Shown here: positions 16,994 through 61,604 of the stretch, in pieces | How positions within the stretch are numbered: the stretch's first letter is position 1 | Layout: each line of letters starts with the position of its first letter | From: Octopus sinensis | Taxonomy: Eukaryota | Reading direction: 5' to 3' | NCBI RefSeq assembly: GCF_006345805.1 | Contig: NC_043000.1 | Location: 155,806,001 to 155,870,000 of the forward strand | DNA: 64,000 nt | Program-made: the position numbers and the translations under genes | The notes under the pieces: generated by a model | Told to the model about the DNA's origin: nothing | Seen by the model: only the letters and a program-made list of their open reading frames with translations | The model's database searches: none

Positions 16994-17505
16994 CATCATC
17001 ATCATTGTTCGACCGTGGTCGAGACAATGGAATTTACCATGCTACGCCAGACTTCACGGTCCATCATGGTATTACGGAGGTCCTATTGCTGGATGCCTGT
17101 ATCCCTGGAGATTACATCAGGGTAGGAGAGTGTGCACCCTCTGGTATTGCTTCCAGAGTAGATGGCTTCCAGAGGAGAAGAGTAGAAATTACCTCTTTTT
17201 CAGCTCTACAACAATGTCCAGCAAACTGGACTCTCCTACCTTTCACAAGAGATGACACAGGTGGTAGTTTCCCATATATTTGCATTTTGGTTGGATGGCG
17301 CTTCCATGAGAGATTTTGAGCTCTCATTAGGAGGCGAGTGCAGGTTCCATCCAACCGCCTCTCAAGCTTCTTTGATAACGTCCAGGTTTCTGAGCCATAT
17401 AGTAGAATTGGTTCGACTGTGGCTTTGAAGATTTCAAGTTTGAAGTCTCTACTTAGATTTGATGACCAGATCTTATGCATGTCATTACAGGCTAACCAGG
17501 CCATA
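16994..17505 (-). mobile_element. RTE LINE 3' end with (TGA)n tail
   Basis: ORF 17112..17504: KATVEPILLYGSETWTL...RRVQFAGHC; (tca)n tail on the plus strand at about 16990-17006. Confidence 0.88.
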
Positions 17506-22870: not shown

Positions 22871-23167
22871 TCACAAGAGGAAGCCCCGTCCAACCAACCT
22901 ATTCTTTGCCATCTGAAATAAAGTCAGGAAAGTTTCTCTATAGTGTGGCTCAACCCTAAACTCAAAATAAGGAGCTGCTGTTGATTGTGTTGGGCTTGAA
23001 GCGATGCTGCTGGACTGATGATCACATACCACAGTACCACCAGCACCACTGTCAACACTACAACCAGCTCCGTTATCAACAGTGTCACTGCTAAGTCCTG
23101 GCAAAGGAATGAAACCTGGTGTGCTATCAAGGAAGGCTGTCACTCGGTCTTTGTTTGGGTGTTGGTC
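22871..23167 (-). CDS. VPS13B: VPS13B last coding exon, DQHPNK...YFEFRVEPHYRETFLTLFQMAKNRLVGRGFLL-stop
   Basis: ctttgttttcag acceptor, phase 0, TGA at 22873-22871; the C-terminus resembles vertebrate VDPHF..FL..F.M.KN....GF as recalled. Confidence 0.92.
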   Translation of the reverse strand, partial: DQHPNKDRVTAFLDSTPGFIPLPGLSSDTVDNGAGCSVDSGAGGTVVCDHQSSSIASSPTQSTAAPYFEFRVEPHYRETFLTLFQMAKNRLVGRGFLL

Positions 23168-24162: not shown

Positions 24163-24490
24163 CTTGAAGCTCATCTGTTTTGTCTGGTCTTGCCATACGA
24201 AGGAAAGGACACAAGAATCCTCCTCTAAGTCTTCCATACTACTAGTAGCAGCAGCAGCAGTAGCACCAGCTGCTGCCGAACTATTGCCACGCAAGTTGGT
24301 GGCAGCAGGACACTCTATCTCGGCAAGGGCAAATGTCTGGAGAGACATGTCTTCTTCACAATCATAAACAAACAGCAGTTCAGGGGTCAGCAGAAGAACA
24401 ACTTTGGAGCCTAATCCAGCAAAGTCAAACTGTACGACATCAACAGCCATCAAGAGAGTTGCTACTGGCATCACAGACTGCAGTGTTTTG
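24163..24490 (-). CDS. VPS13B: VPS13B penultimate coding exon, (F)KTLQSVMPVATLLMAVDVV...LLLTPELLFV...QMSFK (PH-like region)
   Basis: atttcctcag acceptor, gtaact donor; 328 nt, phase 2 to 0; K.LQS and LLLT.E.LFV motifs. Confidence 0.92.
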
Positions 24491-30862: not shown

Positions 30863-30965
30863 AAGAGATATTTAACACTGGAATTCCTTCCTTGATGAAC
30901 AGGTTCTAGGGATGGCTTTAACCGGGCTTTTGGCACTTGAGTCAAGCCAACACCATGCAGTATAC
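30863..30965 (-). CDS. VPS13B: VPS13B coding exon, GILHGVGLTQVPKARLKPSLEPVHQGRNSSVKYL
   Basis: Found by hand. cttttctttttccctag acceptor, gtaagt donor; 103 nt, phase 1 to 2, exactly bridging the neighbouring exons; GILHG.GL and NS.VKY motifs. Confidence 0.93.
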
Positions 30966-35167: not shown

Positions 35168-35338
35168 CTTGACCAGTCTGTGAAAGGAACTCTGCTGCAC
35201 CTCCAATTGGTTTAGTAACAACACCAACTAGCCCTTTACCGACTCCAGTTACAAATCCGCTTGCTAATGAATTGTCGCTGAGTAGCTGCGAGGACAAAAC
35301 ACCTTGAATTGGTTGGTCAGCAATCCCTGCAATAGCAC
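35168..35338 (-). CDS. VPS13B: VPS13B coding exon, GAIAGIADQP...GVGKGLVGVVTKPIGGAAEFLSQTGQ (ATG2_C-like amphipathic region)
   Basis: gttgcag acceptor, gtaagc donor; 171 nt, phase 1 to 1; GVGKG..G..TKPIGGAAE is a VPS13 family motif. Confidence 0.96.
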
Positions 35339-48614: not shown

Positions 48615-48785
48615 CAAGTAGACTAATTCCTAGACCACTTAGTCCTTGTTTGAGACCATCAGATAAACCAGTTGGGCGAATTCTTCGATTTTCTTCCTGC
48701 CGTTCTAGATGACCAGCATCTAGTGAGAGGCGGTCCATATTTCGAGATACACTGGATGCAAAGTTTGTTATAGAGGTGAGTGTAC
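48615..48785 (-). CDS. VPS13B: VPS13B coding exon, GTLTSITNFASSVSRNMDRLSLD...GLKQGLSGLGISLL
   Basis: ttctttag acceptor, gtgagt donor; 171 nt, phase 1 to 1; the TLTSITN..S..RNMDRLSLD motif is characteristic of VPS13B. Confidence 0.96.
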
Positions 48786-54265: not shown

Positions 54266-54442
54266 CTGCAGTAACATTTCTCAGCAATGAAGACATTCCC
54301 TGGGATACACCGGTAAGAAAAGCTCCAGGACCTTGTGTTAGACCAGTGATTGGCAGCTTGAACAGATCAGCCACCCCTGTGCCAATATTGCGCACAAGAC
54401 CAGTTGGATTCCCAAGAATTTCTAAAGAACCAACAACTATTC
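54266..54442 (-). CDS. VPS13B: VPS13B coding exon, GIVVGSLEILGNPTGLVRNIGTGVADLFKLPITGLTQGPGAFLTGVSQGMSSLLRNVTA
   Basis: Hand-translated (below the ORF-track cutoff). gattttcag acceptor, gtatac donor; 177 nt, phase 1 to 1. Matches the vertebrate VPS13B GSLDILGSP..GPGAF motif as I recall it. Confidence 0.95.
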
Positions 54443-55505: not shown

Positions 55506-56788
55506 CTGCACGAAACAAGGCTCCAGATGCATAATGCATAGTAATTGAGCGAATGAGATGTTGGCATGATGTAAAGATTTCATCTTTCTCAAACTTGCCA
55601 AATGATAATGGTGAATGGTCTGATGCAATGAAAAGCTTCAATGATGCATGTACACTGAGTAATGTGTTGATAGGATGGATGCACAAATATTGCATTCTGA
55701 TTGGGGAATTGTGAACTTTTGCCGCTTGCAACAGTGATCGTGGCAAATGCTTTAGACTACTGGACTCTTGAGGTTCACTGGAGAGTGGAGTTGGAATGAA
55801 TGCTTGAAGTTCTTTGAAAAGTCGATAAATGAAGGCGTCTTCAACAAACAGAGCCAATGGCTGTACAGAAATGTCTAAAGCTCTGATGAAGGAACCAGAA
55901 TTTGAAACGTCAGTCTCCAAGACTAATTGTAAATGTAGAAAGCTGTCAGATTTCAAAATAGCATGTTTTTCAATTGCACTCATGTGACTCTCGATCGTAG
56001 GTATTGTCGTCTTTTTGGATGATGCTGGAGACTGCTGACGAATGAGAATGACTGGGAAATCATACTGTGCTCTGTGAAATAGTTGATTATCATTTGTATG
56101 TCACCGATGCAAAGGCTACTACAAGATTTCGACATTTGTAGCATCTGTGATGGGAAGTTCGTTGCTGGATAGTGTGCCAAGAAAAAATTGGACAGAGAGA
56201 TACATAAGATTTCACCAATTATATCAGACGAGCTCATTTCATCGAGTATGATAATACAGACATTTTTGAGTAAACAGCCACAATTGAAACAAATGTCCCA
56301 CTTGGGATCTAACGATGTTAGCATATTAGCTTTTTGTAAGGACATAACGGATGAAAATGTTGATGATTTCTTAACAGTCTCCTTCGAACCCGATGTTATT
56401 TGATCCTTGATGAGAACAGTGGTTTCCCGCCCTTTTATTCGACTGCGGATTTCTTTTGCAGATATATCTGCTTTACTAACAGGTTCCAAAATTAAGTATG
56501 TTGTCATGTTAACTCTTTCCACATGAACTTTGATGTCAGAAAAGTTTGGTATACGGAGAAAAGTATCGTAATGTGACAAAATATCAATTCCACTGCTCCA
56601 CCGTGCTTTTGTAGTCCCACAAACGTCGTCCTGTGATGAAACACCAATATGAAGCTTTGGCAATATTTGGCTACCTGGCATTTCAGGGAAGGTAGAATTA
56701 ATAAACGGCATGGTGTAATATACACATTTACCAGCAGCTATTGTAGGAAGAGCATCCAAATACTCTGTTTCTTCTAAAACTGTTACAT
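55506..56788 (-). CDS. VPS13B: VPS13B large coding exon carrying a 1-nt frameshift at about 56091
   Basis: caaattag acceptor, gtaagt donor. 1283 nt where phase 1 to 1 needs 1284. The upstream frame reads ...SSLCIGDIQ; the downstream frame reads DNQLFHRAQYDFPVIL...LALFVEDAFIY...HYASGALFRA, typical VPS13B C-terminal motifs. Confidence 0.92.
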
Positions 56789-57631: not shown

Positions 57632-57877
57632 CACTTATGCTGAGATTCATTAAAGTCTGTCCGTAGGTAACTGGGAAAGAACAACAGTTTGAAATCAAGC
57701 AACCCGGAGAATTATCTTGCTCTGCCACAAAGTAAGTAAGTCCTTCATCTGTGTGGCCACTGATAACCAAGGGACGAGTTGTTGCATAGCTGCTGGCTTT
57801 TATTGGCACAGAAGTTGTAAGTCGAACACCAGCTTTACTGGAAGTTATTCTTAAAGGAAAAGACCAAGCAGATTCAT
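57632..57877 (-). CDS. VPS13B: VPS13B coding exon, (D)ESAWSFPLRI...EQDNSPGCLISNCCSFPVTYGQTLMNLSIS
   Basis: ctccacag acceptor, gtatgg donor; 246 nt, phase 1 to 1; W-S motif and SP..LISN.C motif resemble the VPS13 VAB-repeat region. Confidence 0.88.
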
Positions 57878-58434: not shown

Positions 58435-58651
58435 CTGTAGGCTCTAATTCATGGATTTGATATTGGTTGCTTTTATCAATCTCTCGCAGTCGAATGTAAT
58501 GAACAAAATTGTTTTTCTGATTGAAATCAATGCCTTGGTGTTTCTCTTGTAATAGGACTGTCCACGACAATAGGGGGCTCAAATTGTCAGCATCTTTGGA
58601 CTGGCTGTGACTTGGAATAATGCATTGTTCTTTTTCAGTAGGGAGAGTAAC
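58435..58651 (-). CDS. VPS13B: VPS13B coding exon, VTLPTEKEQC...HELEPT
   Basis: ttatttcag acceptor, gtattc donor; 217 nt, phase 0 to 1; open frame (ORF 58415..58672). Confidence 0.8.
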
Positions 58652-61466: not shown

Positions 61467-61604
61467 CTTACCGTGACCCAACGGCACACAGACCATTTGT
61501 ATTTGATAGGGGGTTCCACTTAGGTTTGTAAGAGAGAACCGTTCTGACACAGTAATGACCCTTATGTTGTGATGTACTGATGAATTCACAGTGAAGAAAT
61601 AAGC
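61467..61604 (-). CDS. VPS13B: VPS13B coding exon (first in window), AYFFTVNSSVHHNIRVITVSERFSLTNLSGTPYQIQMVCVPLGHGK
   Basis: Acceptor ttctttcatttcag before 61604, donor gtaagt after 61467; 138 nt, phase 0 to 0; joins the next exon in frame. Confidence 0.8.

What the first reader, a model, noticed from the sequence alone, without database searches (positions are those of the whole stretch)
56085..56103. One-base frameshift inside the conserved DIQxDNQL motif of an otherwise intact VPS13B
Seen: the minus strand reads GGT GAC ATA CAA AT GAT AAT CAA CTA. The upstream frame ends at TGA 55982-55980; the downstream frame (DNQLFHRAQYDFPVIL...) is open to the donor at 55506 but has a TGA just upstream at 56103-56101. 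The exon is 1283 nt where both splice phases require 1284, and no GT-AG micro-intron fits. Established: the QxDNQL motif is conserved in VPS13 proteins, and VPS13B loss causes Cohen syndrome in humans. Inference: about 610 downstream codons over 7 exons are stop-free and in phase, so a consensus error (GG, TT or AAA under-call) is most likely. A segregating null allele or recoding is less likely; there is no canonical X XXY YYZ slippery heptamer. Automated annotation will probably split or truncate this gene.
Basis: partly seen in the sequence, partly recalled or inferred. Interest (0 to 1): 0.7.

Follow-up and report, generated by a model that had tools for sequence, protein, structure and literature searches.

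The report
One-base gap in octopus VPS13B exon
A single missing T breaks the reading frame of an otherwise well-preserved octopus VPS13B gene; it is most probably a small error in the genome assembly, not biology, though a rare real null allele cannot be excluded without the reads.

Summary
On the minus strand, exon 56788-55506 is 1283 nt, and the neighbouring exons' phases require a multiple of 3. The upstream frame stops at 55982-55980, and the downstream frame has a stop at 56103-56101. Five independent short-read assemblies of a sister octopus, and a more distant cephalopod, read CAA ATT GAT AAT where the window reads CAA AT- GAT AAT, so one T of a TT doublet (Ile codon) is missing. The shift sits inside Q-x-D-N; Q, D and N are 3 of only 12 invariant columns in 49 homologues. 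The rest of the gene in the window is intact: 8 exons chain in phase and 610 codons after the shift are open, colinear with a spliced homologue. dN/dS against the sister species is 0.05 upstream and 0.011 downstream. That rules out an old pseudogene. No splice can restore the frame and keep D-N-Q. There is no slippery heptamer and no downstream RNA structure. The window's own species was not found in any searchable collection, so consensus error (about 0.8) versus a real, probably heterozygous, null allele (about 0.15) could not be decided directly. Low interest.

The parts
55506..56788 (-). Exon E0 of VPS13B, 1283 nt, one base short of the 1284 required by the phases of its neighbours
   Evidence: Intact orthologous exon in L001-L005 and L006.
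56091..56093 (-). Frameshift site: A-T-G on the minus strand, where relatives read A-T-T-G. One T of the Ile codon ATT is missing; the remaining T is 56092.
   Evidence: DNA alignment. All 11 aligned orthologues have I/L/V here.
56083..56096 (-). Codons of the invariant motif Q-(I)-D-N-Q: CAA AT- GAT AAT CAA
   Evidence: Q, D and N are invariant in 49 homologues, 3 of only 12 invariant columns.
55980..55982 (-). Premature TGA reached by the upstream frame, 37 out-of-frame codons after the shift
56101..56103 (-). TGA in the downstream frame just 5' of the shift. It shows that the downstream frame cannot be used upstream of the site.
57632..57877 (-). Upstream exon Em1 (246 nt; begins with 2 nt and ends with 1 nt of split codons). 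It carries a VAB-repeat-like LISNCCSFPVTYGQ signature.
   Evidence: Splice sites and phases. 64% identity by tblastx to L006 8749-9012.
54266..54442 (-). Exon E1 (177 nt)
   Evidence: 88% identity by tblastx to L006. Colinear with P0050 and with VPS13C and VPS13A.
48615..48785 (-). Exon E2 (171 nt)
35168..35338 (-). Exon E3 (171 nt)
30863..30965 (-). Exon E4 (103 nt), found by phase and splice-site scan
   Evidence: polypyrimidine fraction 0.89, GTAAGT donor. Colinear with P0050.
24163..24490 (-). Exon E5 (328 nt)
   Evidence: 96% identical to O. bimaculoides.
22871..23167 (-). Last coding exon E6, stop codon included (22873-22871)
   Evidence: 100% amino-acid identity to O. bimaculoides.
58435..58651 (-). 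Putative upstream exon Em2 (217 nt; phase 0 in, 1 nt out). Supported by splice sites and phase only.
   Evidence: No homologue support obtained.
61467..61604 (-). Putative upstream exon Em3 (138 nt; phase 0 to 0). Supported by splice sites and phase only.
   Evidence: No homologue support obtained.

Best explanation
The window carries the 3' third of an ordinary, functional VPS13B orthologue of an Octopus species close to O. bimaculoides. The frameshift is most likely an artefact of the assembly consensus: one T of a TT doublet in ...CAA ATT GAT... was under-called, giving ...CAA AT GAT.... In the animal the exon would then be 1284 nt and encode ...GDIQ-I-DNQL.... Shown here: the missing base, its position, the intactness and strong constraint of everything around it, and the lack of any splice or recoding rescue. 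Inferred: that the base is missing from the assembly and not from the animal's DNA.
For: (1) Five independent short-read assemblies of a sister species have an identical, uninterrupted ORF over the exon, and so does a more distant cephalopod (L006). Both read ATT where the window has AT. (2) Against the sister species, the only frame-breaking difference in the 1283-nt exon is this base. The 74 substitutions give dN/dS 0.037 overall, 0.05 upstream and 0.011 downstream of the shift, with 1 non-synonymous change out of 24 downstream differences and dS 0.27. The downstream 610 codons have therefore been translated throughout the divergence. (3) All 8 exons in the window chain with GT-AG sites and matching phases, with no stop in 610 codons after the site. 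They are colinear with a spliced homologue to its C-terminus (E=2e-149). (4) The shift hits Q-x-D-N, which is invariant in 49 homologues, and lies in a confidently modelled beta-strand. (5) The deletion is a one-base shortening of a 2-base run next to AAA, the typical residual error of long-read consensus (own knowledge). The window has no N in 64 kb of very repeat-rich DNA, whereas the short-read-based O. bimaculoides locus has a 516-N gap within 21 kb. This suggests a long-read assembly (inference).
Against: There is no read-level evidence. Neither the intact nor the truncated same-species product exists in any collection I could query. The assembly technology and its accuracy are unknown. 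If it is a high-accuracy (HiFi-type) assembly, a deletion in a 2-base run would be an unusual error, and a real heterozygous variant becomes relatively more likely. No second indel error in the window is available to show that the assembly is error-prone.
Confidence: 0.8

Rival explanations
1. The deletion is real: a recent loss-of-function allele of VPS13B, carried most likely in the heterozygous state by the sequenced animal and captured in the consensus or pseudo-haplotype. The mRNA would end 37 out-of-frame codons later, at 55982-55980. It would probably be degraded by nonsense-mediated decay, or give a protein lacking the last 610 residues: the rest of the post-VAB beta-sheet, the ATG_C helices and the PH-like end.
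For: The sequence as given has the deletion. VPS13B loss is recessive in humans (Cohen syndrome; PMC7068118), so a carrier would be viable. Nothing in my data contradicts a very young allele, because strong past constraint is compatible with it.
Against: The prior is low: a given individual carries a heterozygous frameshift in a given gene only rarely, and the assembler must also have picked that haplotype. The change has the form of a common consensus error. No independent sample with the short form was found, but none of the same species could be searched.
Confidence: 0.15
2. VPS13B is a fixed pseudogene, or is being lost, in this octopus lineage.
For: The reading frame is broken in the only copy visible.
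Against: There is a single disabling change. 610 downstream codons are open, all splice sites are intact, and dN/dS downstream of the break is 0.011. A pseudogene of any age would show further stops, indels and relaxed constraint.
Confidence: 0.01
3. The frame is restored at the RNA or translation level: an unusual internal splice, programmed -1 ribosomal frameshifting at CAA AUG, or transcriptional slippage.
For: Formally, 915 GT/GC..AG pairs of 26 nt or more within the exon would restore the frame.
Against: Every such splice removes or misreads the invariant D-N-Q, because the first acceptor after the site is at 56072, and none has consensus donor and acceptor context. There is no X XXY YYZ heptamer and no A/T run long enough for slippage. 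The 126 nt downstream fold no better than shuffles (z=+0.55). The relatives are simply in frame, so a recoding signal would have had to arise together with the deletion. Cephalopod A-to-I editing cannot add a base (own knowledge).
Confidence: 0.02

Closest known systems
VPS13B (COH1), the Golgi-associated member of the VPS13 bridge-like lipid-transfer proteins
   Same: The C-terminal region (model residues 444-695) aligns with solved VPS13C and VPS13A at E about 1e-28. Homologues of the exon are named VPS13B by JGI. The order is as described for VPS13 proteins (PMC10953354): VAB-like repeats, then long beta-strands, then the GNPxGL/amphipathic-helix region, then a C-terminal domain.
   Different: There is no biological difference apart from the one-base gap. 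Pfam models do not detect this region, even at E<=1. Orthology to human VPS13B specifically, as opposed to A, C or D, rests on the JGI names, not on a reciprocal test made here.
Residual single-base indel errors in long-read genome assemblies (the kind handled by NCBI as 'LOW QUALITY PROTEIN' models)
   Same: A one-base shortening of a short homopolymer inside an otherwise conserved, constrained exon. The window is gap-free through repeats.
   Different: Not demonstrated. The platform and the reads are unknown, and only one such event is visible in the window.
Human Cohen-syndrome truncating alleles of VPS13B
   Same: If real, the change would truncate the protein before its C-terminal targeting region. 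Such alleles are recessive nulls (PMC7068118).
   Different: There is no evidence that the allele exists in an animal, and no phenotype data.
Programmed -1 ribosomal frameshift sites
   Same: Only that a -1 shift at this point would restore the downstream frame.
   Different: No slippery heptamer, no stimulatory structure, and no conservation of the shift in relatives.

Membership tests
VPS13 family (bridge-like lipid transfer proteins) | Significant sequence similarity to the conserved C-terminal (ATG_C / amphipathic-helix) region of known VPS13 proteins | tested here: met
   phmmer against PDB: VPS13C 9yqp_B at 6.2e-28 and VPS13A 9yg5_B at 8.8e-28, over model residues 444-695.
VPS13 family (bridge-like lipid transfer proteins) | Match to Pfam VPS13 domain models (SHR-BD/VAB, VPS13_C, ATG_C) | tested here: not met
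   No Pfam family at E<=1 for the 924-aa model or for P0001. I read this as a sensitivity gap of the models for VPS13B-type sequences, given.
VPS13B orthologue (as opposed to VPS13A, C or D) | Closest to VPS13B among the paralogues | tested here: inconclusive
   Two homologues (P0023, P0033) are named VPS13B by JGI. No human VPS13B sequence was available for a reciprocal comparison. The solved VPS13A and VPS13C chains align only over the C-terminal region (model residues 444-695), at E about 1e-28.
VPS13 VAB-domain repeat asparagine | The Asn of the D-N-Q motif is one of the six conserved VAB-repeat asparagines | tested here: inconclusive
   The AF2 model of P0001 puts the motif at the end of a 17-residue strand (244-260), after a helix and a disordered linker that follow the short-stranded VAB-like part. 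The fold search gave only weak groove-type hits: Vps13 and Atg2 N-terminal fragments, E 0.05-0.06. It is probably the post-VAB 'APT1-homology' beta-sheet (PMC10953354), so probably not a VAB asparagine.
Processed or unitary pseudogene | Several disabling mutations and relaxed constraint (dN/dS near 1) | tested here: not met
   One disabling change only, 610 open codons and intact splice sites. dN/dS is 0.011 downstream and 0.05 upstream.
Programmed -1 ribosomal frameshift | Slippery heptamer X XXY YYZ at the shift site | tested here: not met
   The site reads AUA CAA AUG AUA.
Programmed -1 ribosomal frameshift | Stable downstream stimulatory structure, and conservation of the shifted arrangement in relatives | tested here: not met
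   MFE -14.4 kcal/mol against shuffles at -16.0 +/- 2.9, z=+0.55. Relatives are in frame.
Assembly consensus indel error | Reads of the sequenced individual disagree with the consensus at the site | not testable with these tools
   No reads or other assemblies of the species are reachable: exact look-ups of truncated and intact products all came back negative.

The most novel reading that the evidence does not exclude
The deletion is a genuine, naturally occurring VPS13B null allele carried by the sequenced wild octopus. This would be a spontaneous invertebrate counterpart of a human Cohen-syndrome allele, in an animal with a large nervous system.
Probability: 0.15. Interest if true: 0.3.

Novelty: not a real feature. 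Interest (0 to 1): 0.08.

Why it matters
If it is an assembly error, as is most likely, the value is practical. The site should be corrected or flagged, because automated annotation will otherwise truncate or split a gene of about 4000 codons. If the allele is real, it would only be a rare recessive carrier state, of modest interest to cephalopod neurobiology. Neither reading opens a new biological question.

Tried and rejected
- Same-species evidence. Exact look-ups of the two truncated ORFs, of two other exon-spanning ORFs, and of three intact and two truncated variants with alternative start codons all returned nothing. The first homology search also showed no hit above 97% identity.
- Source of the sister-species runs. 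A literature search for the SRR accessions gave only an unrelated paper.
- Pfam. No hit for the exon halves, the 924-aa model or P0001.
- Profile of exon orthologues against PDB. No meaningful hit.
- Fold search of the AF2 model against PDB. Nothing below E=0.04, so the motif could not be mapped onto a solved VPS13 structure.
- Second homology search with exons Em1+E5+E6. It returned a single protein, useful for naming the genus but not for same-species data.
- Internal-splice rescue. Enumerated and rejected.
- Frameshift-stimulating RNA structure. Rejected.
- Tandem repeats at the site. None.
- Other genes in the window that could reveal further indel errors. None usable; the remaining ORFs are transposon fragments.

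Full report
**What is in the sequence**

On the minus strand the window reads ...GGT GAC ATA CAA AT GAT AAT CAA CTA... at 56105-56080. The frame that is open from the exon's start runs into TGA at 55982-55980. The frame that is open to the exon's end has its last stop, TGA, at 56103-56101.

The exon is bounded by an acceptor AG at 56790-56789, preceded by a long polypyrimidine tract, and by a CAG|GTAAGT donor whose last exon base is 55506. This gives 1283 nt. It begins with two bases that complete a codon started by the upstream exon (57877-57632, which ends with one extra base). It ends with one base that begins the Gly codon completed by the next exon (54442-54266). Its length must therefore be a multiple of three.

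**What is missing**

A search with the exon's two frames joined by an X found an uninterrupted 456-aa ORF, P0001, that is 97% identical and covers the whole exon. P0001 is encoded identically in five separate short-read run assemblies, SRR11869384, -85, -90, -91 and -94 (loci L001-L005). A second ORF, P0002, is 66% identical and comes from another cephalopod assembly (L006).

At the DNA level both relatives read CAA ATT GAT AA[T/C] where the window reads CAA AT- GAT AAT. So one T of a TT doublet, the third base of an Ile codon, is absent. Against the sister species, the only other length difference inside the exon is an in-frame 3-nt indel at 56011-56009.

**Identity of the gene and of the organism**

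- The spliced model I built (below) matches solved VPS13C and VPS13A chains at E=6e-28 and 9e-28 over residues 444-695.
- Two of the exon's homologues carry the JGI name 'vacuolar protein sorting-associated protein 13B'.
- Pfam models do not detect the region at all.
- The C-terminal two exons are 96-100% identical to Octopus bimaculoides XP_014791417.1.
- Non-coding DNA is 85-94% identical to that species' chromosome CM046604.1.

The window is therefore from a congener of O. bimaculoides, not from that species itself.

**State of the rest of the gene**

The following exons all have GT-AG borders and phases that chain without exception, apart from the one-base deficit in E0:

| Exon | Coordinates (minus strand) |
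|---|---|
| Em1 | 57877-57632 |
| E0 | 56788-55506 |
| E1 | 54442-54266 |
| E2 | 48785-48615 |
| E3 | 35338-35168 |
| E4 | 30965-30863 |
| E5 | 24490-24163 |
| E6 | 23167-22871 |

- After the shifted codon there are exactly 610 codons without a stop.
- A spliced, transcript-type homologue from a more distant species (P0050) is colinear with this model across all six junctions to the C-terminus (45% identity, E=2e-149).
- tblastx against L006 independently confirms Em1 and E1.
- Two further upstream exons, 58651-58435 and 61604-61467, are predicted from splice sites and phase only.
- 'Otherwise intact' is thus verified for the part of the gene that lies in the window. That part is only the last 8-10 exons of a very large gene.

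**Constraint**

Between the window and the sister species the exon differs at 74 of 1277 aligned bases. By the Nei-Gojobori method, dS=0.27 and dN=0.010, giving ω=0.037. Upstream of the shift ω=0.05. Downstream ω=0.011, with one non-synonymous change among 24 differences. The codons behind the break have clearly been translated during the divergence of the two species. An old or fixed pseudogene is therefore excluded.

**The motif**

In an alignment of 49 homologues, only 12 columns of the exon are invariant. Three of them are the Q, D and N of Q-x-D-N, immediately around the gap.

An AlphaFold2 model of the intact orthologue (mean pLDDT 72, and 84-96 around the motif) puts the motif at the end of a 17-residue β-strand. 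That strand follows a short-stranded VAB-like part, a helix and a disordered linker. A fold search gave nothing significant; the best two matches were Vps13 and Atg2 N-terminal groove fragments at E≈0.05.

Together with the published architecture, in which post-VAB 'APT1-homology' β-sheets extend the lipid channel (PMC10953354), I infer that the motif belongs to that β-sheet stretch. It is then probably not one of the VAB-repeat asparagines described in PMC7068118. This placement is an inference.

**Rescue mechanisms**

- Splicing. Formally, 915 GT/GC..AG pairs inside the exon would restore the frame. The first acceptor after the site is at 56072, so each of them deletes D-N-Q or leaves it read out of frame. 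None has convincing splice-site context.
- Frameshifting. A -1 shift would be needed for translational rescue. The site (AUA CAA AUG) is not a slippery heptamer, there is no long A/T run, and the 126 nt downstream fold no better than shuffled sequence (z=+0.55).
- Relatives. They are simply in frame, so there is no conserved recoding signal.

**Error or allele?**

This is the one question I could not settle directly. Neither the truncated products the window encodes, nor the product an intact exon of this species would encode, nor other exon-spanning ORFs of the window, are on record anywhere in the searchable collections.

The indirect evidence favours a consensus error:
- The change is a one-base shortening of a short run in A/T-rich context.
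- It is the only lesion in a strongly constrained gene.
- The window runs gap-free through 64 kb of repeat-rich DNA, as a long-read assembly would. The short-read-based O. bimaculoides locus, by contrast, has a 516-N gap within 21 kb.

A real, young, probably heterozygous null allele remains possible, because VPS13B loss is recessive in humans. I put it at about 0.15.

**Verdict**

The feature is most probably not biological. Its practical consequence is that gene predictors will truncate or split VPS13B at this point unless the base is corrected or the model is flagged.

Noticed in passing
L007 1828-2343 and 9983-11093 (O. bimaculoides CM046604.1 44401954-44423046); window 30965-30863, 24490-22871: The O. 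bimaculoides RefSeq 'uncharacterized protein LOC106884511' (XP_014791417.1, 199 aa) is simply the C-terminus of VPS13B: exon E5 from an internal Met, plus E6. The orthologue of exon E4 is not found in that locus, and a 516-N assembly gap sits where it is expected. That species' VPS13B model is therefore probably split by a gap.
   Followed up: partly
window 56009-56011: An in-frame 3-nt indel relative to the sister species: the window has an extra Thr, SSKKTTIPT against SSKK-TIPT. It lies in a poorly conserved stretch of the same exon and looks like ordinary divergence.
   Followed up: partly
window 24163-24490 (exon E5): The Ala/Ser/Thr-rich low-complexity run differs in length between the window (AAAGATAAAATSS) and O. 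bimaculoides (AAAGAI--AATTS). It is an in-frame 2-codon difference.
   Followed up: no
window, whole VPS13B model (57877-22871, minus strand): Pfam-A gives no hit even at E<=1 for 924 residues of a bona fide VPS13 C-terminal region that matches solved VPS13A and VPS13C at about 1e-28. The Pfam VPS13 models appear not to cover VPS13B-type sequences of molluscs.
   Followed up: partly
window e.g. 61064-60873, 59538-59272, 51237-51028, 49739-49464, 23772-23626, 20719-20564: Many copies of one short interspersed repeat. In ORF listings it recurs as '...AFHASMGWTVQLGSGKPEGCTRP...' and in the other frames as '...WHGLDGATGVWEARRLHQAQSDLA...'. It fills the introns and the region downstream of the gene.
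   Followed up: no
window 17112-17504 (minus strand): A reverse-transcriptase-type retroelement fragment. It is 46-48% identical at protein level to two copies in the unrelated cephalopod locus L006 (5147-5494 and 7884-8225).
   Followed up: no
window 58435-58651 and 61467-61604 (minus strand): Two further candidate VPS13B exons upstream, predicted only from splice sites and phase compatibility. Neither had a detectable counterpart in L006 or in the protein search.
   Followed up: partly
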